A stretch of DNA of 61,823 nt, counting the filler, from Platydemus manokwari (Eukaryota): assembly GCA_037951405.1 (NCBI GenBank). It is 5 parts of 5 records of this genome, joined end to end, with 100 filler letters (N's around TTAATTAATTAA, not from the genome) between each part and the next. Parts side by side here need not be neighbours in the genome. Positions count along the whole stretch, not along the records: positions 1 to 11,756 come from JBBMOY010481109.1; 4 more parts are not named here. One strand, 5' to 3'. The notes beneath the pieces are model-generated. The model saw only the letters and a list, made by a program, of their open reading frames with translations. It was not told the DNA's origin and did not search any database. The first letter of the stretch is position 1, and each line of letters opens with the position of its first letter. Positions 1 to 11,022 of this stretch are shown here, one piece after another. The position numbers and the translations under genes are program-made.

Positions 1-681
1 TGAGTTGTGGATGACGTTGTATTGTTTCATTTTCTGAAAATAAAGATTAAACATTTAAGGTTGATAACATATTGTATTCGATATAATGTATGTTATTTAA
101 ATATCATCATCATTGATTTTATAGTTTTAGATTTTTTATCTTTTATACTTTATGCTCTGGCTATTTGTCATCATGATACGTTTCGCTTAATGACAATAAG
201 AATGAAGACATAAATTGTTTAATAAGAATGAAGGCATATATTAGATTACACTGAAGCCATCGGTTATAATAATGAAAGCATACATTACATAAGGTTATAA
301 GTAATCACATTAAAGGTTATAAATAATCACAATAGCTAATCATTGTTGCTTAATCGATCTCAGTATTCGGCTCTTGTCATTTGTCTGTTGGCTTGTTGTC
401 CGGCTTGAGTTTGGCTCTTGCTTGTTCCAAATCTGCATTACTGAAATCGAGACATAATTCGTCTAAGTTGTCTTCACATGTATAGAGGATGGCCGTAATG
501 TGCCATCTCTTATTTTTGACGATTATGGTTTGCAGAATTGTCGGTGGCAGATAGGGTGCCTCTTAGCTGTGGGAAATCGGTGTTGATATCAATACTTATT
601 GGTTCAATTTGAGCACCTGTAGTTGGGCTTGGCACATACTTGCTCTTTTTCGACATAGGTTCGAAATTTCCTTCTTCTATT

Positions 682-1281
682 TCAACTTCCACTACTCCGG
701 CGTCTAGATCGATAGATTGATATTAGCTGAGTGGTGTTGACCGCTGGTATCCATTGCTCTTTTATAATGTTGTGGATCTCTTTTATTTGTTCCACTTGGT
801 TATTAGTTTCTAGTTCGTGTATTTTCTTTAATGGATTTGTCAGTAGTTTATGTACTACTCTTTTAAGTTTATATGGTTTTTTGTCATAAACCTTGTACTT
901 TGGTAATAGTTCCTCCGTTGATAAATCTTTGATTCCCATAATTTGGTAGGTAGGAAATGCTAAAGCCTTTATTATATCTGCCACTTGAAAGCCTATTAAG
1001 ACTTTTTGATCGATTATTTCCTTGATTTTTTCGTATTCTTTAGCTTGATCCCATTGATTGATTAATTTTTCTTCATCCAATTTGTGAACATCTTTACTGT
1101 AGTGTCTGACGTAGTTTCTGGGAGTTATTAATAAATTTATTAATAGTTGTCCGTTTCGATTGAGAATTGATATTGAGCAAATAGTAGTTATCGGAAATTT
1201 TTCCCTTATTATTTCCAAAGTGTCCACATAGAACGCCGCTTTGTGTAATGCATTGAGTTGTTCCTCTTCCGGCGTGATATT
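682..1281 (-). CDS. REX4/ISG20-like DEDDh 3'-5' exonuclease-fold protein with substituted catalytic residues
   Basis: About 200 uninterrupted codons: AFYVDTL...CSISILNRNGQLLINLLITPRNYVRHYSKDVHKLDEEKL...EKIKEIIDQKVLIGFQVADIIKAL...IKDLS...YKLKRVVHKLL. This is collinear with the REX4 pattern ALDCE..ARVSIVN..G..LYD.YVKP...V.DYRT.VSGI....L...V...L.GRILVGH...DL..L...IRDTS...SLK.L...LL. Confidence 0.75.
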   Translation of the reverse strand, partial: NITPEEEQLNALHKAAFYVDTLEIIREKFPITTICSISILNRNGQLLINLLITPRNYVRHYSKDVHKLDEEKLINQWDQAKEYEKIKEIIDQKVLIGFQVADIIKALAFPTYQIMGIKDLSTEELLPKYKVYDKKPYKLKRVVHKLLTNPLKKIHELETNNQVEQIKEIHNIIKEQWIPAVNTTQLISIYRSRRRSSGS

Positions 1282-1419
1282 TCAAGTGTTTTGAGAGGGA
1301 GTTCTTCAAATCCTCTAGTTATTGGATACGCTTTAGGTTCTTGTTCCTTTTTGATCATTTCTAGTACCACTGTTGTTGGTACAACTTGACTTAGAAGGGT
1401 TATTTGCTATACCCTTTCG

Positions 1420-1860
1420 TCATAATTTCCGAGTTCTAAGCTGGTGTGAGGTGAGAGATGAATTGGTTCTCCTACTCCAGGGATGTGGCCTTTTAGTGGT
1501 AGTTAAGATTAGCGTGCTATAGTTTTTGTGATTTTGCAGGGCTGGCATTAGTTGTATCAGTTTTTGTACGTTTGTATAGGTGAGTAGAGCAGCTTGAATG
1601 TGCCTACCACTTCGTCCGCTATATTTGCGTTTGTTTGGGAGTTGTAAATGATTTGCGAAGGACACATATTTGGTGCCTTTTCTTGCTTTTATCGCCATAT
1701 ACTCATGATATTGTAAGCCAACTGGTGCTTCGGTAGAGTAAGTATAGCAAGTTGCTTTACTGGTATAGGTGGACAGATATCTTGAAACTTCGTATCTTCT
1801 CATCTGTAATAAAAGATTTAAATTAGCAAAGCAGTAACTTGATTTCAAATTATGTTGATG
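1420..1860 (-). pseudogene. Uncharacterised element-encoded domain (weak resemblance to PC4/Sub1 ssDNA-binding fold)
   Basis: Open frame 1420-1911. KGTKYVSF...LTYTNVQKLIQLMPAL loosely resembles the PC4 pattern, by eye only. Confidence 0.3.
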
Positions 1861-2870
1861 CTGTATAATGAATAATAATATGATAAATATTAATATAATT
1901 TTTAGTAGCAACGTTAGTTGTCATAAAGTCGTCATTGAGGCGGCTATTAGCGCGATCATTACTTCTGCTCTATTTATCATCTCTAGTTTTTCTGCAGAGA
2001 GTGTAGAACTTAATAAATTTTGCTGGAATGGTATTATTTCATTATTTTCATCGTCTTAGTTTTTCTGGTTGTCCTGTGATAGTATTTGCCTTTGGTCTAT
2101 ATCAATTTTGTTGATTTGCTTAATGTGTGACCATTATTGTGGTGATATCTTTCCCATCATTAGTTTTAATTTTTTAGTTATTGTTGCTTTATTAGCTGTT
2201 GTATTTCTTCTTGTTATTATTCTTTTCTGTATCGTTGTTCGCCAATCACAATTTATTGCAGGTTTTATATAGTGTCTGGTTTTTTTGTGTATTTCGTGTG
2301 GTGTATCTCGCAAGGCACGTGTTATAATTATTATATATTTTTCACATGGGTCTCGGAGTAGATGCATTGTTTTAGGTTTATGTTCTAACATCATGTAATG
2401 CTTGACTTCCTTTTTATTTTCTCCTATCACCGTGGCTCTTATTATATCGTAAGTACTTTCATCTTTGATAATTGAGAGGCATCGTTTATCGGATTCTATT
2501 GTTATTCTTGTAAAATGTGGCATTAATTGTATTTCAACTATATCTCCATCTATTAATGTATGATTATTTTTGACATAGCACTATAGTTCCATTTTCACCG
2601 TAATGACCTGATTTGGTCGTAATCTTTCGAATACATGCTCCTTTGTTACTATTGCTGAATCAATAAGTTTATTTTTATAAGTATATAATTTTATTTTGTT
2701 ATAAAAGGGTATCTTTTCGGGTACGTGAATTGCTATCCAGAGTTCCGCCCAATTTAGACTCCAGTTATGTCTGATGAGAGGTGGTTTAGTGTAAGTGTGA
2801 CAATTGGCTATTGTTAACACATTCAGTAAGGTGATCATCATTAAAGTAAGTGATCTGAGTGAATATCTAT
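1860..2870 (-). pseudogene. Post-integrase putative type I membrane protein (signal peptide - beta-rich, possibly FN3-like ectodomain - TM)
   Basis: The IN tail RYSLRS runs directly into the hydrophobic LTLMMITLLNVLTIANC. It is followed by HVFERLRPNQVITVKM and LLRDPCEKYIIII (FN3-like L-x-P-x3-[YI]-x-[VI]), and the TM segment LLLKIILIFIILLFII at ~1867-1914. Confidence 0.5.
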
Positions 2871-2959
2871 GGCTGGTTGATCCTTGTTTGCTTGTTGATG
2901 TTCCGGTTTCAATATCATCTGCTCCTATTGTTCTCATCTGCTTTGGTTTATCTATCGTT

Positions 2960-3960
2960 TCCTTTTCGTATTCATTATATTTTTTACATTGCTCTGCGTG
3001 AACCCATATTAGATCAACTTTATTTTTTCCTGGTGGTCTTACCACTAATTTGGTATCCGTTACTTTTTTCTACTATATATGATCCCTTATATAGTCGTAT
3101 TAATTTTAGTGATATCCCCTTTTTACATGTTCGATTTTCTATCATAACTTTGTCTCCTACTTGAATTGAATGACTTTTTCGATTTTTGTCATAGTAGTTC
3201 TTTACTTGTTCTTGTCTATATTTAATATTGAGATTCGCTCTTTGCCAGGCTTCCGCGAGTCTTTCCTTCATTAATACCGCATAATCTTCAACGTCCATGT
3301 ATTGGGATATTTTTGGTTCTATTCCTATATCGACTGGGATATTACTTTCTCGAAGATACATAAAGTAAAAAAGTGTATACCCTGTCATTTCATGTGCTGT
3401 GTTTTGGTATGCAAAAAGGCATGATGGTATTTGTGCCGTATTTACGTATGATGGTATCATATTTAGTAAAGTTCCATTAAACCTTTCTACCAAAGCATCT
3501 GTTTGCGGATGGTATGGTGATGTATTGTGTTTCGTAATTTGCAGGTATTTATTGATTTCCATTAGAGTATTATTCATAAATTTTGTTCCTCTATCCGTGA
3601 GTACTTTTTTCGGTATTCCGTATCGAAATTTTATTTCTTCCACATATACTTTAGCTATTGTATTTGCTGTGTGAAGTAATCACAAAAGACTAAAATAAAT
3701 TTATTTCCGTTTCTTGATAATGGTAGTCGTCCTACTATATCCGTAGCTACCATGTCCATTGGTGTGGAGGGTTCTGGTATCGGTTTTAGTGGCACTCTAT
3801 GTTTTTTTCCCGTATTCTTTCTTGTTTTACATATTTGGCATGAGTTACACCATTTTCTCACATCCATTTTCATGGTTCGCCAGTGATATTTCTGTTTTAG
3901 TCTTGATAATGTTTTACGAGTATACAAATGTCCTCCTATAGTTCCGTCATGATATTAAAG
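2960..3960 (-). pseudogene. pol: Integrase (HHCC zinc finger, DDE core, GPY/F tail), disrupted
   Basis: GGHL..KTLSRLKQKYHWRTMKMDVRKWCNSCQIC; DIVGRLP...ILVFCDYFT; GIPKKVLTDRGTKF; YHPQTDALVERFNGTL; GDKVMI...KLIRLYKGSYIV. Confidence 0.95.
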
Positions 3961-4269
3961 TAGTAAAGTTTCCTTTAACTTTTCTGGTACTATTATTACA
4001 TGTTTTGTTCCATCGTCATATTTTAATACGTCTCCTTCGAATACAAATTTTGCTTTATTTTTTTTTAGAGATTTGGTTAGTGTCTTGGGAGGAATTCCCA
4101 GTGGTATTCTTATAATATTTTGCCAATTAGTTGGCATTTCTCCCATTCCAATAATAATTCCATATATTTCATCGTCTTCTTTCTGTAACCTGTTTATATC
4201 AATAATGTCTTGCATTTGGTGGCCTGTTTGCACTATATTTGCTTGTTCTAATTCATAGGCTTCTGGTAT

Positions 4270-4692
4270 TGCTCTTGATAAGGCATCTGCGTTTTCATTG
4301 TTTTTTCCATTTCTGTAACATATTTTTATGCTATATTGTTGTAGTTTTAGTGCCCATCGAATAAGTCTGGAGGCTGTATCTTTGTGTTGAAGTAACCATT
4401 GTAAAATTCAATAGTCCGTAAGTACGTGTATTTCTTGTCCGTCGATATATGGTCTGAACTTTTCAACTGCATATACTATGGCTAACGCTTCTAGTTCTAT
4501 TACGGCATAGTTCTTTTCGTGGGTTTTTAATCCTCTGTTTACATAGTCTATAGCGTATTCTTTTCCATTTTCATCAATTTGTCCTAGTACCACACCGCTA
4601 GCATAACTGCTTGCGTCAGTCATGATCAAGGACGGCTTATTGAGTACAGGGTATCTAAGAATTGGTTCCTCCGTGAGTTTGTTTTTAAGCAT
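4270..4692 (-). pseudogene. pol: RNase H domain of Pol
   Basis: PILRYP...IMTDASSYASGVVLGQ...YAVIELEALAIVYAVEKFRPYIDGQEIHVLTD, then RLIRWALKLQQY...NENADALSR (4270-4400). Confidence 0.94.
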
Positions 4693-4699
4693 GTTAAAG

Positions 4700-5460
4700 G
4701 CTTTTTCCTGTTCATTGTTCCAGACGAAAGGTTTATTTTTCCGCAGTAATATTGTAAGTGATGTGGAAATTGCTGAGCAATTTTTATTAATTTTCTATAG
4801 TAGTTTCCTGTATTTGTTTCGTAGTTTTTGGTTGTGGGAATTTTTCTACTTTTTCTACTTTTCATACGCATTTTGTCGGTTTGAGTTTTACATTGGCTGT
4901 TATCATTCGTTCAAAAACTTGAGCTAAGTCATCTAAGTGTTCTTCAAAGCTACTTGAAAATATTATTACATCGTCTATATATACCATGGTGTGTAGTAGT
5001 CCCAATAATATAATATACATTGCAAATTGGAAATTGGCTGGAGCTCCTTTTAGTCTGAAAGGCATTACCGTCCACTCAAGCAACTTCTTTCTATCAGTGA
5101 AGGCTGTGATTGGTATTGATTCCTCTTCCATTAGTATATTATTATATCCTGTTTGCAAATCAAGTGTTGAGAATATTTGGGCTCATCTTACTTTATTAAG
5201 CATATCTTCTATGAGAGGTAGTGGGAAGTTAATTGATTTTGTTTTTTCGTTTAACTTCCTATAATCAATGCATAGTTTCATTTTCCTTCATTATTTTACC
5301 ATTACTACTGTTGATCGCCAGGGGGATTGACTTAATCTAACTCTTCCATGATCTAATAGTTCTCGTTATTGTCGTTCTACTTCTTCTAGTGCTAGTGGTA
5401 TCATATAAGGTCGTTGGCATACTGGTTCTGGTTTTATAAGTTCTATTTTATGCTTTAGTA
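4700..5460 (-). pseudogene. pol: Reverse transcriptase domain of Pol (Gypsy type), disrupted
   Basis: SPW, FPLPLIEDML, FSTLDLQTGY, TAF, MPFRLKGAPANFQ, VYIDDVIIFS, KLKPTKC. Confidence 0.95.
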
Positions 5461-5540
5461 CTTTAAATTGTCCTAGATCATACTCATGTTTTGCAAATGC
5501 TTCTTGATATTTTTCTAGTAATATGGTAGGCATCGATTGT

Positions 5541-5921
5541 CTAATTGCATAAACTTAAGTAACATTTTAATTCTCTCAATATTGGTAGCTGAGACCCGTT
5601 GATTCCTATTATTTCAACATTGATTGGCTGGGTCTCTTGCAATTCTTTTTGATTAAGGATTCTCGAATTTATTATACTTGAATCAGCTCCTGTATCTATT
5701 AGGGTGTAGACACGATGTCGGTTAATTCTTATTTGCATAAGTCTCGAGTCTGCATTAATGGTTTGTACCATGCAGTGTCTGTCCATTATTCCTAATTGGT
5801 TCTGTCTTCTGATTGTTGAATCTCCAATGGTGAATTTAATCTGTTCATCTTCTAGAGCTTGAGTTACTTCTCCTAATTGTTGAATTTGGTATAAATTTTC
5901 TGTTGGTATTACGTTTATCAC
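5541..5921 (-). pseudogene. pol: Retropepsin (aspartic protease) domain of Pol
   Basis: IRINRHRVYTLIDTGADSSIINS...IIGING, i.e. the D-T-G catalytic motif and a flap-like IGING. Confidence 0.9.
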
Positions 5922-6179
5922 TGTATCATTTAATATATTTGGTTCGTTTTGATTTGAGTATGAGTTTTTGTATTGGTATTAAACTTATCTCCGTATCATT
6001 TAGCGCGTTTGGTTCTTTGTAGTTGATCATCTGTAAATAACCTTGTTGTATTAGTGCTGGATTAGTGTTGTATTAGTGCTTTGAACTTCCCTTTTTTGCG
6101 GATTGCTTAACTTGAATTGTTCCAGCTTTTACTTCTGGTAAGAAGCTTCTATAGTCTGATGTGTGAGATTGAGATATTC

Positions 6180-7580
6180 GCTCACTGTATGGACTTTCGT
6201 GATAAGTATTATTGTTATCATTATAAGATGGGTTAAGTCCTCAAAGGATATTTGGTTGTTCTCGTAGAAAGACTTGTACAAATTGTAGTTCTTCTCTTGT
6301 TTTTCCATGAACTATGTGGTGAGCCATTATTAGAGCTATTAATGGGTTGCATTCTGCAGCTTGTGGTTTCATTCGTGAGTCTAAAAGTATGTGTGTGATA
6401 TGTTGCATATATTTCTTTTCTTTATTTACTATTACCGCTAGTTCTCTAGTGTATTCCGCTTCTGGTGTTACTGTAACGTCTATGGCTTCACACTTGTAAG
6501 TATACCATCCTTTTCCACTTATTCTTCCATATGTTCCTTGTTCCCTTATTACGGGTGTAATAAGGTCAGGATTTATCAGAGCTATTACCATTCTGTTTCT
6601 TATCGTTTATTTGTCTCTTCGACAGCCATTGTGTATTGTTTCTTGATATATTTCAAGTAGCTATAATTTGAGATTATGATATAAGTAGTCTATTTTATTA
6701 TTCAGATAACCCAGCCAGCTTAATATCTATTTTATGAATAGGAGTAGTCTTGTGAGCTTCCCTTTCACTTATATAAATTCCTTTATAATTGGTTTGGTAC
6801 ATCAGGTTTTCCTTTTAGTATTCTTATGGTTTCGGTTTCCGCAGTCGATACCAATATGGTTGGTAGTTGTTTTTCTTTGAAATTCTTCACTTCCGTTTTT
6901 CTCTGTAATTTTTCTTTTGTTATTTTCCTCGCTACTAAATGTTTTTCTTCTACAGAAGTTCCATTTATCGGTGTGAAAGAAACTCGTTTCAAAAATGATA
7001 AAGGGCAGTGATTATTTTTTATCATATTGTACATAAAAGTGGCTCCATCTGTTTGGCATGATGAGAATGCTGAATAACAAGAAGGATATTGTGCCATTGT
7101 TCCCGTAGTCAAGTCAAAAGTAGCTACATATGTCCGTCACTCTATTTGGTAGTCTTTTATGTCAACTACATGTGATATATGTTCTCCTCTACTATATTTT
7201 GGACGACCTATACATGTTCCATCCGGTTTGATGTGATCTCCTTTCGTTATTGTTTCAGCCATTATCGATCCTACTTTTACTATTGATGTTAATTCATTAT
7301 CTATTTGTAGTTTTTCTATGTCAAATGCTTCATTGCAATTTTCTGGTGATATTTTAATGATTCTGGGTATTACCTTAGTATATAGAATTTGTGTTCTGCT
7401 GAACGCTCCGCAGTAGTACTCGAAGACAGCTCGAGTGACTCGGCATTCCTTAACGGTTGTCCTATAGTAGTCTTTTCCCTGATAAACGTAGTAATTCTCT
7501 TTTGGTCCTTTTGTAACTCTATATGGATGTACCGTTGGGCAGTCAATAAGATCTACTAAAGATCTAACCATAAACCCTTC
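6180..7580 (-). pseudogene. Chuvirus-like / class III (gB-type) fusion glycoprotein (env-like), frameshifted and partly deleted
   Basis: Collinear motifs of the chuvirus G family: SLVDLIDCP, VYQ..YYRTTVKECRVTRAVFEYYCG, KISPENCNEAF, PDGTCIG, CYSAFSSCQTDGATFMY..C, (6600-6780 by hand) YLNNKIDYLYHNLKL*LLEIYQETIHNGCRRDK*TIRNRMVIALINPD, and GTYGRISGKGWYTYKCEAIDV...RELAV...YMQHITHIL...ECNP. A hydrophobic remnant LTHLIMITIILIT lies at ~6200-6240. Confidence 0.85.
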
Positions 7581-8870
7581 ATTTAGTCCTCCTAGAGTTC
7601 CTATTCCAGTAACTGGGTTTGGTGGTTTTTGTATAAAATTTTCCCAGCCTAATTCGAGGTAAATATTTCTTTATTTCTTTATTGAGTTCTTCATATACTT
7701 TAAGTGATACCTTAAGTAATTTGGTATTTTTAGGTTCCACTCCCCTTGCTAACTTTAATAAAGTTTCTTTTATACTGCTTTTAACATATGGCATTGTTAT
7801 GTCTGCTATATTTCTTAATATTCTACTTTTTAATTGAGTTCCTACTTTTGGGTTTATCAATTCCGTTGGTGGTTGAATTTTAATTATTTGTGAATGTTGT
7901 GGTCTACCTCATTTTTGTTGCCTTCTATCGCTTGGTTCCTATGGCTCATTTCTTTGATTTATTTCATTTTCCTCAGTTGGATCGTAATTTCTTGGTAGTT
8001 CTTAGAGTAGATTATCAGTTTCTATTATTAATACGTCTGGTGTATTTAGTTCTGTCGTTGGTGGTACAGTTTCATGTGGATAGTTTCATCTATCTCCACC
8101 TGAGATGATTGAAGTTGAGTTTCGTCTTCTTGAGAAGTTATTCCTGAATTTGCTATCGGCATTGTGGCTCTTTGCCATTTTGCGTTAGTAGTAGGGATAT
8201 TAATTACTTGTACTGATGTGGCAGACATCCTATATTTACTAGATATTCGTCATCATCTATCGGTATTCCCCATGCGGCTATAACGAATGGGTCTCGTGGT
8301 CGCTTTTGCTCTATTATTAATGCTCTCAAGCACTCTAAGTATTTTGTCTTGATCTGTTATTCTTTGAGTTAATTCCTTTTCGACATTAGATGGTAGTTGT
8401 AATAGCTCTCTTTTATCTGCTTGTGTCATTTCAACTGTGACTAGTATGTTTTCTGTGTCTAGTGCTTGCATGTTTTCTGTATAATTATTAATGTCTTTAG
8501 TTGGATCCATTTTTGGATCAAAACTCGTAGGCATGCTTATCGTATCATCATGTTTTTGTAAGGTGTGCTAACCTATCTCTGTATTTTCGACGACTCCGGT
8601 CGATTGGATATCTTGTATGTAATAGGCATATGAGACCTTATTACAAAGTGTCGTTTTGAAAGTATCGGCGGCTGCAGTCGTGGTAAGAAATATATCGTTA
8701 TTTTCAGTTAAAGAGTATTATTTTTCTATGTTTTCACTTATTATTTCCTCCTGTTGTCTTATTTTACTATATAAAGTTGTTGAGAGTATTACATTACAAT
8801 GTTCCTGTTGTGTATGTAGTCGCTCTAGTCTTATTCGTTCATCGTGTACTTGTTGCTCAAGTTGCATAAG
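7579..8870 (-). pseudogene. Uncharacterised polyprotein segment between Gag and the glycoprotein
   Basis: ORF fragments 8253-8534, 8046-8228 and 7579-7860 lie on the element strand with the same compositional bias. No motif was recognised. Confidence 0.45.
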
Positions 8871-8874
8871 TTTA

Positions 8875-9603
8875 TCATATTTTTCCTGAGCATGATCGTC
8901 CTATATGTCCAAATTGGTTGCATCTAAAACATGTTATTTGTCCATTTAGATTTACATTATTCCTTTTATCATTATTTTCTATGGTTGTTTTACCACGGCA
9001 AATTATCGCGACATGTCCCATTTTTCCACATTTATCACATTTTAGATTAGTGCATTTACACTGACTTGTCGGATGGTTTGTTCGTCCACACTTATTACAT
9101 GGTATCGGTTTCCCATTTATGCCTTTCATAGATCTACAATCATTTGTTCGATGTCCAGTACGTAGGCATCCTTGGCATTTTATGTTAGATTTAGTATTAT
9201 TTTCATTTTTCGGTCCCTTAATGTTATTATTAGCATTTTTATTATTATTTTGCCACTTATTCATCCTATTCTCCTGAACTGCAAGTGCAAACTCGTTATT
9301 CCCCATACTTACTTCTGCTATTCGTGCCTGTTGAACTAATTGTTCAAATTCATCTCCTATATGTAAACTAAGTGTGTTTTTCATGGTTTGTGGTAATCCA
9401 TCCCAAAATTGATCTTTTACCATTTCTTCCTTGTCAGGATCCCAATTTACTCTAGGTCCGAAAACTCTTTCCGCTAATATTGTAAGTTCCCCTATATGTT
9501 CCACTGGTAGTTGCTTACGGTTTTTGAATTATTGTCTATACATTCTTACTATGTAAGGTGGAAGAAGCGCTTCACCGCAGGCTTGTTTGAAATTATTCCA
9601 CAC
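8875..9603 (-). pseudogene. gag: Gag (capsid C-terminal part + nucleocapsid with four CCHC zinc knuckles), 5'-truncated
   Basis: Reads VWNNFKQACGEALLPP...RQ*FKNRKQLPVEHIGELTILAERVF...DQFWDGLP (retrotransposon gag pattern). Knuckles: CQGCLRTGHRTNDC, CNKCGRTNHPTSQC, CDKCGKMGHVAIIC, CFRCNQFGHIGRSC. Confidence 0.92.
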
Positions 9604-9720
9604 TTATATATTAAAATAGATAATAGAATACACTCAAAATTATTGACAATAATAGATTTATTTAACTGATTTTTATGAGCTGACAAATAACCAGGCTTGT
9701 GGGGGTTTTCTCAGTTTGTG

Positions 9721-10080
9721 CTTCATTAACGAAGTTACTGACTCTATATGGATAGAGTGTATATTTTTTATGGATAGTCTCTTAGGTTTCCCGGTAAGAG
9801 CCCTAAAGTTGCTAGATTTTTGGAGGTTAGTCCTACGTGGAACCGTAACCTCTTGGACCGAATTTATTTAAGACTTTAGATTTTATGAGATTTTACCTCT
9901 AGTTGAACTGGGTTCAGTCTAGAGTAGTTTTTTAATCGGATTTGATTAGATTATTAACTTTTTAAATTTAAGACACCGGAACAACTTAATAGAGTTGTTG
10001 GTGGAGAATTATTGGTAGGAAATAAAGTAATATAAATCAAATAACTTTAAACACCAGAACAACTTAATTGGGTCGTTAGA
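9721..10080 (-). promoter_or_regulatory. Structured leader upstream of gag (cluster of hairpins)
   Basis: Inverted repeats ACTCTAT/ATAGAGT (9741-9758), CTCTTA/TAAGAG (9779-9800), GAGGTTA/TAACCTC (9823-9852), CTCTAG-TTGAAC/GTTCAG-CTAGAG (9897-9924), TAATC/GATTA and ACAACT/AGTTGT. Confidence 0.4.
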
Positions 10081-11022
10081 GTGTATTAAAATGCGAATAT
10101 AGAATTTATGATTCATCTTTTAATTTAAAAATAGTTGTTATTAAAGATAATGTTATAAAATACTTAATGCTTATGAATACTTAAATATTATAGAAGTAAA
10201 ATTGCCGTATCAGAGATTATTGTATGAGATATAGTCGTAACAATTATGAAAGCCACTGTAATTATCTTTGAATTGCAGTATCAGATATTATTGTGATATA
10301 GTCGTGGTAATTATGATTGCAATAATGGATGCAATATAGCTATGAATATGTTAATGTTGTGTTTGTTTCTGCTTTTCATCTTCATTAAATATTTCTGTAG
10401 TTTTTTATTTCTATTTTTGTTTTAAAATTTCCCATTTTCTATTTTCAAATTAATTTCCTATTTTTTTATTAATTTATTACATTTTCTATTTTTGGTTTTA
10501 TTCTTGCTATTTTCAGCTGATTATTATTTGATGTAATTATTAATTATTATTTGTTTATTATAGTATAAGATTCTAGTTATCTCATTAATTATTATCTGTA
10601 AAATTATTGTGTTCCCAATAATACTCATATTTTAAAATTTATCAATTCAGCTCAACTGCTAGCATTAGGTGATTAAATCAATAAATCATATATTTTAATC
10701 TGTGGTGATTTGATCTGTTTTCTAAATTTCAAATAAAAGGATCTATCATACATATAAAGGAACTCACGTTGATAAGTTGCAATACATTCATTAACATTTA
10801 CAGCCCAATATTAATAACGAGGAATGAAAGTGTTAAGGTAATGATCGATCAAACCAATAATTGTTGTGCCTAATTAGTTTCAATTTATCATTTTAGTTGA
10901 TAAATTTTAAAAATTTCTTAATTAAGATTTTTAATTTTTTATGTGATAAGAATAACATTGAAATGCAAAATAAATTATTGATTTCAGTTTTCATTATCGA
11001 TAATAAATTGATCGTCACAGAC

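What the first reader, a model, noticed from the sequence alone, without database searches (positions are those of the whole stretch)
340..10100. Multi-cargo Ty3/Gypsy element: Gag - viral fusogen - Pol - second membrane protein - pseudo-exonuclease
Seen: all fragments from ~9600 to ~500 lie on one strand, abut with only stops or frameshifts between them, and give the order Gag(4xCCHC)-X-G-PR-RT-RH-IN-SP/ectodomain/TM-Y-DEDDh. Known: Gypsy elements normally have gag-pol with at most one 3' env. Extra-ORF Gypsy elements exist, e.g. giant planarian Burro elements and rotifer elements with DEDDy nucleases. Inference: the ancestor was a retrovirus-like element with a ~3000-aa polyprotein carrying a fusogen, a separate surface protein and an RNA-binding nuclease-fold accessory. 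I do not recognise this combination from described families. This is the best candidate for an undescribed system in the window.
Basis: partly seen in the sequence, partly recalled or inferred. Interest (0 to 1): 0.9.

Follow-up and report, generated by a model that had tools for sequence, protein, structure and literature searches.

The report
Decayed Burro-like enveloped Gypsy retroelement
The window holds a dead, heavily mutated copy of a retrovirus-like Ty3/Gypsy element whose intact relatives in metagenomes encode one ~3,000-residue Gag–fusion glycoprotein–Pol–membrane-anchor polyprotein followed by a separate ISG20-like (pseudo)exonuclease gene; the gag–env–pol layout is already known from planarian Burro elements, and only the exonuclease gene and the membrane tail seem undescribed.

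Summary
On the minus strand, about 9880 to 390, lie in order: Gag with four CCHC knuckles, a spacer, a Monjiviricetes-type fusion glycoprotein, PR-RT-RNaseH-IN, a hydrophobic-segment/ectodomain/TM module, and a DEDDh-fold domain without catalytic residues. This order is not a chance mosaic. An intact 3181-aa metagenome polyprotein (P0187) is collinear with window 9600-2818 (1352 bits, 41% identity). It also has four CCHC knuckles and ends in a TM anchor. 66 nt downstream it has a 585-aa ORF2 (P0036) of the same exonuclease family. Five further loci repeat "polyprotein, then exonuclease-family ORF", two of them inside LTR-like direct repeats. The window copy is dead: at least 37 frame interruptions in the polyprotein and at least 5 in ORF2. 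No LTRs lie in the window. The large ancestral polyprotein is supported, but in relatives the exonuclease gene is a separate ORF. An env in frame between gag and pol is published for Burro/GYPSM1, and the GAG-ENV-POL order for flatworm, bryozoan and nematode elements. The ISG20-like ORF2 family, with active and inactive forms, and the C-terminal membrane module were not found in the literature I could search. Verdict: new variant of a known kind, moderate interest.

The parts
1850..9880 (-). Polyprotein gene of the element: Gag, spacer, G-like env, PR, RT, RNase H, IN, C-terminal membrane module. It is one broken gene. The frame is interrupted at least 37 times. In the 1771 residues alignable to P0187 there are 15 in-frame stops and 9 frame changes.
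   Evidence: Pfam. Chained tblastn to the intact 3181-aa P0187: q69-2861 against window 2818-9600, 1352 bits, 40.8% identity. Minimum-interruption count.
8890..9880 (-). Gag: capsid-like part plus an array of four CCHC zinc knuckles (array at about 8890-9190). At least 4 interruptions.
   Evidence: zf-CCHC E 8e-9. Four CX2CX4HX4C motifs, as in P0187. 246 of 330 P0187 Gag residues aligned. Three-frame reading of 9450-10109.
7600..8889 (-). Spacer between Gag and env with no recognisable domain. At least 8 interruptions. The corresponding spacer in relatives carries a ubiquitin-like or UBX-like stretch.
   Evidence: No Pfam hit. 66 of 560 P0187 spacer residues aligned. Ubiquitin family in P0140. 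Weak UBX hit in the P0187 spacer.
6180..7570 (-). G-like envelope fusion glycoprotein domain (Pfam Monjiviricetes_fusion) with its TM at 6183-6227. At least 8 interruptions between 7599 and 5925.
   Evidence: PF24664 at 38.9 and 27.2 bits in two pieces. 411 of 710 residues of the P0187 G region aligned. Relatives score 280-326 bits on PF24664. TM.
5560..5770 (-). Retroviral-type aspartyl protease (DTG motif). No interruption counted in this domain.
   Evidence: RVP, gag-asp_proteas.
4410..5530 (-). Reverse transcriptase followed by RNase H. At least 5 interruptions in the RT part and at least 2 in the RNase H/tether part.
   Evidence: RVT_1 E 2e-14; RT_RNaseH_2 E 6e-28.
2900..3920 (-). Integrase: H2C2 zinc domain, rve core and C-terminal part. 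At least 2 interruptions.
   Evidence: Integrase_H2C2 E 4e-10, rve and rve_3. 443 of 450 P0187 IN residues aligned.
1864..2850 (-). Post-integrase membrane module: a signal-like hydrophobic segment (2806-2850), an ectodomain-like stretch of about 300 codons, and a strong TM (1864-1908). At least 4 interruptions. It has no sequence homologue, but its position and topology are conserved in the clade.
   Evidence: Hydrophobicity scan. P0187 has the same layout, with hydrophobic segments at 2852-2870 and 3136-3154 of 3181 residues. 15 of 17 clade polyproteins end with a strong TM. No Pfam hit.
392..1791 (-). ORF2-type accessory gene of the 'N-domain + ISG20-like DEDDh' family, in its catalytically degenerate form. 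It is one broken gene with at least 5 interruptions. The exonuclease-fold domain lies at about 751-1191.
   Evidence: Representative search: 63 clusters, best E 2.4e-21. tblastn outer bounds 392-1281 (P0002) and up to 1788 (P0006). N-domain match of the upstream piece to P0012 and P0006. Fold. Catalytic columns..
9881..10100 (-). It has no coding signal and no LTR match to the 3' end of the window. It contains a 35-nt direct repeat (9965-9999 and 10043-10077).
11023..11681 (-). Two overlapping MATH/TRAF-type ORFs with a partial tandem duplication, on the same strand upstream of Gag. They are either a host TRAF-like gene or an upstream accessory ORF of the element; this is unresolved.
   Evidence: TRAF-mep_MATH E 3e-14. 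Duplication 11131-11231 against 11274-11374 at 77%. Burro precedent (PMC6431247). No relatives found.

Best explanation
The window carries a dead relic of an env-bearing Ty3/Gypsy (Metaviridae-like) element of the Burro-like kind.

Shown:
- Its intact relatives encode one giant polyprotein in this order: Gag with CCHC knuckles; a spacer with a ubiquitin-like stretch; a Monjiviricetes-type fusion glycoprotein with its own hydrophobic leader and TM; PR-RT-RNaseH-IN; and a C-terminal module of hydrophobic segment, ectodomain and TM.
- A separate ORF2 follows. It encodes a beta-rich N-domain, an ISG20/ISG20L2-like DEDDh domain, a disordered tail and a small beta domain.
- ORF2 exists in a catalytically intact form and in a degenerate form. 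Some elements carry both. The window and its closest relative carry the degenerate form.

Inferred mechanism:
- The polyprotein is threaded through the ER membrane. Gag and Pol lie on the cytosolic side and the two ectodomains in the lumen. The element's protease and host signal peptidase cut it.
- The G-like protein lets particles pass between cells.
- ORF2 binds (degenerate form) or trims (intact form) RNA 3' ends. This would either process the element's own RNA or blunt host RNA-based silencing, as other DEDDh proteins do.

The window copy itself can do none of this.
For: - Domain calls in the window.
- Collinearity with intact P0187: 1352 bits, 40.8% identity, window 2818-9600.
- Pol is 44-48% identical to PF24664-carrying polyproteins, against about 34% to ordinary Gypsy pols.
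- Four CCHC knuckles are shared with P0187.
- Intact polyproteins of 2627-4057 aa hold zf-CCHC, PF24664 (280-326 bits), PR, RT, RNase H and IN in one ORF.
- The terminal TM module is conserved in 15 of 17 clade polyproteins.
- ORF2 of P0187's contig is P0036, which the window's own exonuclease-like frame had already hit independently.
- An exonuclease-family ORF lies downstream of the polyprotein in L004, L006, L010, L030, L031 and L032.
- LTR-like direct repeats bracket polyprotein plus ORF2 in L031 and L032.
- Fold and profile matches to ISG20L2 and ISG20.
- Catalytic residues are intact in about 28 of 63 family clusters and lost in the window and its nearest relatives.
- Decay counts.
Against: - No LTR, PBS or target-site duplication could be defined in the window, so its ends are not shown.
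- The membrane module and the spacer have no sequence similarity to those of relatives; only position and topology agree.
- The direct repeats in L031 and L032 are only 87-90% identical, which is odd next to intact ORFs. Metagenome contigs of multicopy elements may be chimeric.
- In the window, the terminal TM and the start of the ORF2 N-domain lie in one open frame, unlike in L030. A fused ancestor in this lineage is therefore not excluded.
- The class III fold of the G-like domain rests on a Pfam family match. No solved structure came back by sequence.
- All functional statements about ORF2 and membrane topology are inference.
- The host organism is unknown.
Confidence: 0.82

Rival explanations
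1. Composite locus. An ordinary Gypsy element was interrupted by an endogenous mononegavirus glycoprotein fragment, and sits next to an unrelated membrane-protein pseudogene and a host ISG20L2/REXO4-like pseudogene. The shared strand and order are coincidence.
For: - No LTRs in the window delimit the element.
- The membrane module and the spacer have no homologues.
- ISG20-type exonucleases are ordinary host genes.
Against: - The same order occurs in single intact ORFs of 2627-4057 aa in independent metagenomes.
- The exonuclease-family ORF follows the polyprotein in six independent loci.
- None of the top family members looked up carries a name or comes from an annotated genome.
- AT skew and decay are uniform across the whole span.
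Confidence: 0.04
2. The element is larger than the reader's range. It would be a true Burro-type element whose 5' part includes the MATH/TRAF ORFs at 11023-11681 as an upstream accessory gene, with both LTRs outside the window.
For: - The MATH ORFs lie on the same strand, 1.1-1.8 kb upstream of Gag.
- Burro1 has MATH_TRAF_C in its polyprotein, and the Girardia (Dugesia) tigrina Burro-like element has it in an upstream accessory ORF (PMC6431247).
- L031 has a leader of about 4.4 kb with an extra ORF between the 5' repeat and the polyprotein.
- No LTR lies in the window.
Against: - GC falls from 34% to 23-29% and the AT skew weakens upstream of about 9900.
- None of the clade polyproteins listed carries a MATH Pfam domain, and the MATH ORF matches none of the fetched relatives or loci.
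- The MATH ORF has no relatives in the protein search.
- TRAF/MATH genes are common host genes.
Confidence: 0.2
3. In this lineage, ORF2 was fused in frame to the end of the polyprotein, instead of being a separate gene.
For: In the window, the terminal TM and the first part of the exonuclease-family N-domain lie in one open frame with no stop between them.
Against: - In all intact relatives examined, ORF2 is separate. It lies 66 nt after the stop in L030, 360 nt in L031 and about 230 nt in L032.
- None of the 63 family clusters is fused to RT or IN.
- The copy is so decayed that loss of one stop codon is unremarkable.
Confidence: 0.12

Closest known systems
Burro / GYPSM1 giant Gypsy-like LTR retrotransposons of planarians (Jurka 2007; Grohme et al. 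2018; Arkhipova & Yushenova 2019, PMC6431247)
   Same: - Gag with retrotrans_gag and several CCHC knuckles.
- An env with hits to mononegavirus fusion glycoproteins, lying in frame between gag and pol inside one huge polyprotein.
- Ubiquitin/SUMO-like and ankyrin stretches, seen here in relatives P0140, L004 and L006.
- Accessory ORFs.
- Decaying copies with stops and frameshifts are reported in Dugesia japonica.
   Different: - The window's internal region is about 9.5 kb, against up to 25 kb.
- No dUTPase lies between PR and RT.
- No BIR, BCL2, Smc or midasin-like parts were detected.
- MATH occurs only as separate upstream ORFs of uncertain membership.
- The published description I could read names neither an ISG20-type ORF nor a terminal membrane module.
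- No Burro sequence was at hand for a direct comparison.
GAG-ENV-POL 'errantivirus' Ty3/gypsy elements of Nematoda, Bryozoa and Platyhelminthes (Chary & Hayashi 2026, PMC13524379; Sacco et al. 2022 as cited there)
   Same: Non-canonical order gag-env-pol, with a class III-type env captured from RNA/DNA virus-like fusogens. These elements are multicopy and widespread in invertebrates.
   Different: - Those elements are described with separate GAG, ENV and POL ORFs and an env labelled HSV/gB-type. Here env is Pfam Monjiviricetes_fusion and sits inside one polyprotein in relatives.
- That paper does not mention exonuclease or extra membrane ORFs.
Juno/Vesta LTR retrotransposons of bdelloid rotifers with a DEDDy exonuclease ORF3 (Rodriguez, Kenefick & Arkhipova 2017, PMC5408684)
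   Same: An LTR retrotransposon carrying a 3' accessory ORF of the DEDD 3'-5' exonuclease superfamily. The accessory ORFs include TM and coiled-coil proteins.
   Different: - Theirs is RNase D-like DEDDy with intact residues. Here it is ISG20/REXO4-like DEDDh, with an extra N-domain.
- Here the ORF occurs as active and inactive forms, sometimes both in one element.
ISG20 / ISG20L2 / REXO4-type cellular DEDDh RNA exonucleases (PDB 7yw5, 1wlj) and plant SDN1 (5z9x)
   Same: Fold and family-level sequence similarity of the central domain.
   Different: - The window copy and its nearest relatives lack the catalytic residues at the motif positions that could be read.
- The family adds a beta-rich N-domain of about 200 aa, a disordered tail and a small C-terminal beta domain.
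- It is encoded by retroelements.
Arenavirus nucleoprotein C-terminal DEDDh exonuclease (weak fold hits 4o6h, 5lrp, 7v3a); inactive DEDD derivatives Maelstrom/EXD1 (mentioned in PMC5408684)
   Same: - The arenavirus domain is a genetic parasite's DEDDh domain used against host RNA sensing.
- Maelstrom and EXD1 are catalytically dead DEDD folds kept as RNA binders.
- Both are functional analogies for the two ORF2 forms.
   Different: Only distant fold resemblance (E about 0.02). There is no evidence of common origin or shared function.

Membership tests
Ty3/Gypsy (Metaviridae-type) LTR retrotransposon | Pol domain order PR-RT-RNase H-IN, with Gypsy-type RT_RNaseH and Integrase_H2C2 domains | tested here: met
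   Pfam. 44-48% identity to Gypsy-type polyproteins.
Ty3/Gypsy (Metaviridae-type) LTR retrotransposon | Gag with CCHC zinc knuckles upstream of Pol | tested here: met
   zf-CCHC. Four knuckles.
Ty3/Gypsy (Metaviridae-type) LTR retrotransposon | Long terminal repeats flanking the internal region, with PBS, PPT and target-site duplication | tested here: not met
   No direct repeat pair lies in the window, so the ends probably lie outside it or have decayed. Relatives L031 and L032 have bracketing direct repeats of 290-400 bp at 87-90% identity. PBS, PPT and TSD were not tested.
Env-bearing Gypsy elements with gag-env-pol order (Burro-like; GAG-ENV-POL errantivirus-like) | A viral-type fusion glycoprotein gene between gag and the protease | tested here: met
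   PF24664 pieces lie between the CCHC array and PR. They are collinear with the P0187 G region.
Burro / GYPSM1 | env in the same reading frame as gag and pol, in one giant polyprotein | tested here: inconclusive
   Met in 14 intact relatives. The window copy is too broken to tell, with at least 37 interruptions.
Burro / GYPSM1 | Extra domains (MATH_TRAF_C, Ubi/SUMO-like, BCL2, BIR, ankyrin, dUTPase) and an internal region of up to 25 kb | tested here: not met
   None were found inside 390-9880. MATH occurs only in upstream ORFs. Ubiquitin-like and ankyrin parts occur in some relatives only. The internal span here is about 9.5 kb.
Burro / GYPSM1 | Sequence relatedness of RT/IN and env to Burro1-4 | not testable with these tools
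   No Burro, Repbase or Dfam sequence is reachable. The Grohme et al. paper is not held.
Class III viral fusion glycoproteins (rhabdovirus G, herpesvirus gB, baculovirus GP64 kind) | Membership of a class III sequence family | tested here: met
   Pfam Monjiviricetes_fusion is above its cut-off in the window and scores 280-326 bits in relatives.
Class III viral fusion glycoproteins (rhabdovirus G, herpesvirus gB, baculovirus GP64 kind) | Class III fold shown by structure comparison with a solved protein | not tested
   Sequence and profile searches of the PDB returned no glycoprotein. I had rhabdovirus G, herpesvirus gB and GP64 in mind.
DEDDh 3'-5' exonucleases of the ISG20/REXO4 type (Pfam RNase_T) | DnaQ-like fold closest to ISG20/ISG20L2 | tested here: met
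   The window piece models at pLDDT 87.2 and matches 7yw5 at TM 0.71/0.80, E 2.8e-7. The family profile matches 7yw5 at E 1.9e-23.
DEDDh 3'-5' exonucleases of the ISG20/REXO4 type (Pfam RNase_T) | Catalytic D-E-D-H-D residues | tested here: not met
   The window has Q, L and Q at the motif II and III positions, and its open frame does not reach motif I. The nearest relatives P0001-P0006 and P0036 are also degenerate. About 28 of 63 clusters keep all five residues.

The most novel reading that the evidence does not exclude
Two readings go together.

- The ORF2 family is a so far undescribed accessory gene of a whole clade of enveloped Gypsy elements. It combines a cupin/DSBH-like N-domain with an ISG20-like DEDDh domain and is kept in active and inactive paralogues. 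It would serve to manage RNA 3' ends or to counter host RNA-based silencing.
- The clade expresses Gag, a class III fusogen, Pol and a second ectodomain as one membrane-threaded polyprotein. That strategy is otherwise known from flavivirus-like RNA viruses, not from retroelements.
Probability: 0.25. Interest if true: 0.75.

Novelty: new variant of a known kind. Interest (0 to 1): 0.5.

Why it matters
- It links a dead genomic relic to a living-looking clade of giant-polyprotein, env-bearing Gypsy elements that is abundant in environmental assemblies but almost unannotated. One member sits in GenBank as a Flavobacteriaceae MAG protein.
- It shows that the in-frame gag-env-pol layout first seen in planarian Burro elements is not an oddity of one family.
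- It adds two recurrent components: a membrane-anchored tail on Pol, and an ISG20-like exonuclease or pseudo-exonuclease gene.
- These components bear on how retrovirus-like elements acquire envelope and accessory functions, and on how often retroelements borrow host RNA-decay folds.
- For annotation, it supplies a protein family of 63 clusters at 50% identity whose N-domain has no Pfam model.

Tried and rejected
- LTR search in the window (repeat finder, and self-blastn with word size 7): no pair.
- tRNA, Rfam and tandem-repeat scans: nothing relevant.
- Direct PDB sequence search with the window's exonuclease-like frame: only a weak ISG20L2 hit at E 0.17. This was resolved later through the family profile.
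- PDB sequence searches with the G-like pieces, with the G region of an intact relative, and with a 3-sequence profile: no glycoprotein hit.
- The search for homologous proteins with the 20-member family alignment returned only its first sequence.
- Exact look-up of ten window ORFs: none is in the collection, so the source genome was not traced.
With the window's own frame it found nothing.
- A protein search with the MATH ORF found nothing. Local searches of the MATH, spacer and membrane-module pieces against all fetched relatives found only the ORF2 N-domain match.
- Idea rejected: that the roughly 510-aa family on contigs of about 2 kb is a nucleoprotein of a segmented RNA virus. The model is a beta-rich domain plus a DEDDh domain, the viral structure library gives only generic exonuclease and cupin matches, and the genes sit downstream of Gypsy polyproteins.
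- Idea rejected: that the exonuclease-like frame is a neighbouring host pseudogene.
- The Grohme et al. 2018 paper was not held.

Full report
**1. What is in the window**

The piece (1-11756) has 32-37% G+C up to about 9900. A strong, uniform negative AT skew runs from its start to about 9600 and weakens upstream, where G+C falls to 23-29%. All long open frames with domain hits lie on the minus strand.

Each open piece was searched alone. Pfam gives, from 5' to 3' on the minus strand:
- zf-CCHC.
- Two separate matches to Monjiviricetes_fusion, PF24664: 38.9 and 27.2 bits, covering profile positions 38-160 and 350-432.
- Retroviral aspartyl protease.
- RVT_1.
- RT_RNaseH/RT_RNaseH_2.
- Integrase_H2C2.
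- rve.

A pattern count finds four CX2CX4HX4C knuckles. Three-frame reading upstream of the knuckle frame shows capsid-like Gag remnants up to about 9880. Between the knuckles and the glycoprotein lies about 1.3 kb with no recognisable domain.

Hydrophobicity scans find three segments:
- The glycoprotein's TM, at 6183-6227.
- A signal-like segment just after the integrase, at 2806-2850.
- A very hydrophobic TM, at 1864-1908.

**2. The 3' exonuclease-like frame**

On its own it gives no Pfam hit and only a weak ISG20L2 match in the PDB (E 0.17). An exhaustive phmmer scan of 1.84 billion representatives found 63 clusters (best E 2.4e-21, 34% identity). Nearly all are proteins of 420-660 aa with the match at residues of about 200-360, and none is fused to RT or IN.

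- Some members reach Pfam RNase_T.
- A 20-member profile matches ISG20L2 (E 1.9e-23), ISG20 (2.3e-13) and SDN1 (3e-8).
- An AlphaFold model of the best hit (pLDDT 72.9) shows four parts: a beta-rich N-domain, a DEDDh domain superposing on ISG20L2/ISG20 (TM 0.78-0.83), a disordered stretch of about 85 aa, and a small beta domain.
- The N-domain gives only weak cupin/2OG-oxygenase-like matches (E about 1e-3). The viral structure library gives only generic exonucleases and cupins.
- The window's own 181-aa frame, modelled with 39 relatives, reaches pLDDT 87.2. Its top matches are ISG20L2 (TM 0.71/0.80, rmsd 2.4 A) and ISG20.
- In the catalytic columns, about 28 of the 63 clusters keep D-E-D-H-D. 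The window and its nearest relatives do not.

It is a maintained state in intact ORFs of 515-609 aa, not merely decay. The frame upstream of the exonuclease domain matches the family's N-domain, and P0002 aligns down to 392. The gene therefore spans about 1791-392.

**3. Is the order real or a mosaic?**

Scanning JGI metagenome contigs with a family alignment gave 28 loci.

- In L004 and L006, a giant ORF cut by the contig end (at least 2368 and at least 2220 aa) holds PR-RT-RNaseH-IN of Gypsy type, plus a second aspartyl protease and ankyrin repeats. Two exonuclease-family ORFs follow, the first degenerate and the second with intact DEDDh.
- Using that ORF's RT-IN region as a query returned many intact polyproteins of 2627-4057 aa from ENA and JGI assemblies. 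They combine zf-CCHC, PF24664 (280-326 bits), PR, RT, RNase H and IN in one ORF. P0140 also has a ubiquitin-like stretch and ankyrin repeats.
- The window's Pol is 44-48% identical to these, against about 34% to the other Gypsy pols in the list.

The best relative is P0187 (3181 aa).
- It aligns collinearly from residue 69 to 2861 with window 9600-2818 (1352 bits, 40.8% identity).
- It has four CCHC knuckles, like the window.
- It has a hydrophobic segment after IN and a strong TM 19 residues before its end.
- This terminal TM recurs in 15 of 17 clade polyproteins. The window's membrane module shares no sequence with them.
- On two independent contigs (ENA ERZ27256860, and JGI 3300031718 = L030), P0187 is followed after 66 nt by a 585-aa ORF. 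That ORF is P0036, one of the clusters the window's exonuclease-like frame had hit on its own.

L031 (P0155) and L032 (P0162) show the same pair of genes. Direct repeats of 290-400 bp bracket both genes, though at only 87-90% identity.

**4. State of the window copy**

It is dead.
- The smallest number of frame interruptions (stop or frame change) needed to read through is 37 for the polyprotein. By part: Gag 4, spacer 8, glycoprotein 8, PR 0, RT 5, RNase H/tether 2, IN 2, membrane module 4. The parts were scored separately, so they sum to less than the whole. ORF2 needs 5.
- Within the 1771 residues alignable to P0187 there are 15 in-frame stops and 9 frame changes.
- No nested insertion was seen.
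- Over the collinear span the copy is about 530 codons shorter than P0187, mostly in the spacer, glycoprotein and RT parts. This may be lineage difference or deletion.
- No LTR pair, tRNA gene or Rfam family lies in the window, so the element's ends are undefined here.

**5. How it most likely works**

Shown: the gene content and order, the conserved hydrophobic landmarks, and the active and inactive ORF2 forms.

Inferred from the landmarks and from general knowledge of retroviral and membrane-polyprotein biology:
- The polyprotein alternates cytosolic parts (Gag, Pol) and lumenal parts (the G ectodomain and the second ectodomain).
- It is cut by the element's protease and by host signal peptidase.
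- The G-like protein supplies cell-to-cell passage.

Inferred for ORF2:
- The intact form is a 3'-5' RNA exonuclease.
- The degenerate form is an RNA binder.
- Either acts on the element's own RNA or against host RNA-based silencing. The analogies are SDN1, the arenavirus NP exonuclease (weak fold hits) and the inactive DEDD proteins Maelstrom and EXD1 (PMC5408684).

None of this was tested.

**6. Comparison with what is known**

- Arkhipova & Yushenova 2019 (PMC6431247) describe planarian Burro/GYPSM1. It has Gag with two or three CCHC knuckles and an env with hits to arthropod and fish mononegavirus fusion glycoproteins. That env lies in frame between gag and pol, 'the first case' of this layout. 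Burro also has ubiquitin/SUMO-like, ankyrin, MATH_TRAF_C and other domains, plus accessory ORFs, and decaying copies occur in Dugesia japonica.
- Chary & Hayashi 2026 (PMC13524379) describe GAG-ENV-POL elements with class III env in Platyhelminthes, Bryozoa and Nematoda.
- Rodriguez et al. 2017 (PMC5408684) describe DEDDy exonuclease ORF3s in rotifer LTR elements.

The core layout is therefore known. In five full-text searches I found no description of an ISG20-type DEDDh ORF or of a membrane-anchored Pol tail in such elements. I could not inspect Burro sequences or Repbase entries, so this novelty is provisional.

**7. Surroundings**

Two overlapping MATH/TRAF-type ORFs lie on the same strand 1.1-1.8 kb upstream of Gag. 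Their C-terminal part is duplicated. Burro has MATH either in its polyprotein or in an upstream accessory ORF, so they may belong to the element. However, composition changes at about 9900, and no relative carries MATH. This is unresolved. The host organism is not identified.

**8. Conduct**

- Every query from the window was a single open frame given by reference.
- The alignment across frames printed only scores, counts, coverage and outer bounds.
Rhabdovirus G, herpesvirus gB and GP64 were what I had in mind, and they did not come back as named hits.
- I fetched metagenome and SRA contigs carrying relatives of the element's own genes. I read these as virus-like elements, whose natural sequences I may read and compare.
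- The first of these look-ups (P0008) was made before I knew what the family was.
- I left out the look-up of the P0009 cluster's 15-17.6 kb contigs, because at that point I could not tell whether they were a virus of animals. Later evidence suggests they are elements of the same kind, but the step remained left out.

Noticed in passing
window 11023-11681 (-): Two overlapping MATH/TRAF-type ORFs with a tandem partial duplication (11131-11231 against 11274-11374, 77%), on the element's strand upstream of Gag. They recall the MATH_TRAF_C domain or upstream accessory ORF of Burro elements. Whether they belong to the host or the element is unresolved.
   Followed up: partly
window 9900-11000: Very AT-rich stretch (G+C 23-28%) with several short imperfect direct repeats (9965-10077, 10225-10316, 10408-10514). 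It could be the leader or LTR remnant of the element, or host intergenic DNA.
   Followed up: no
window 1791-1908 (-): The terminal TM of the polyprotein and the start of the ORF2 N-domain share one open frame. In the closest intact relative (L030) a stop and 66 nt separate them.
   Followed up: partly
L004 7268-10371; L006 6861-9920: These elements carry two exonuclease-family ORFs in tandem, the first catalytically degenerate and the second with intact D-E-D-H-D. Their polyprotein continues about 1300 aa past integrase, with a second (DDI1-like) aspartyl protease and ankyrin repeats.
   Followed up: partly
P0001 model residues 10-200 (family N-domain): The conserved N-domain of the ORF2 family (invariant Pro-Asn, no Pfam model) folds as a beta-rich domain. 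It has weak matches to cupin/2OG-Fe(II) oxygenases, including AlkB homologues. An AlkB-type demethylase domain has been reported in orchid Gypsy elements (PMC9289625).
   Followed up: no
L032 1-6700: On the same metagenome contig as the element lie fragmented bacterial-type genes (MacB, ABC transporter, YknX, TetR) at 45-63% G+C, against 39% in the element. This is either a chimeric assembly or a host genome rich in acquired bacterial DNA.
   Followed up: no
L031 16872-18689: A 605-aa ORF with DNA_pol_B_2 (protein-primed polymerase type) lies just outside the 3' direct repeat of the element. It may belong to a neighbouring mobile element.
   Followed up: no
L001 2-3022 (SRR33639317): Here an exonuclease-family ORF (degenerate form) is preceded by two coiled-coil ORFs, not by a polyprotein tail. 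The family may also travel in another context.
   Followed up: no
P0166: A 2627-aa polyprotein of this clade (PF24664 + PR + RT + IN) is deposited at NCBI as a hypothetical protein of a Flavobacteriaceae MAG. This is evidently a mis-binned eukaryotic retroelement.
   Followed up: no
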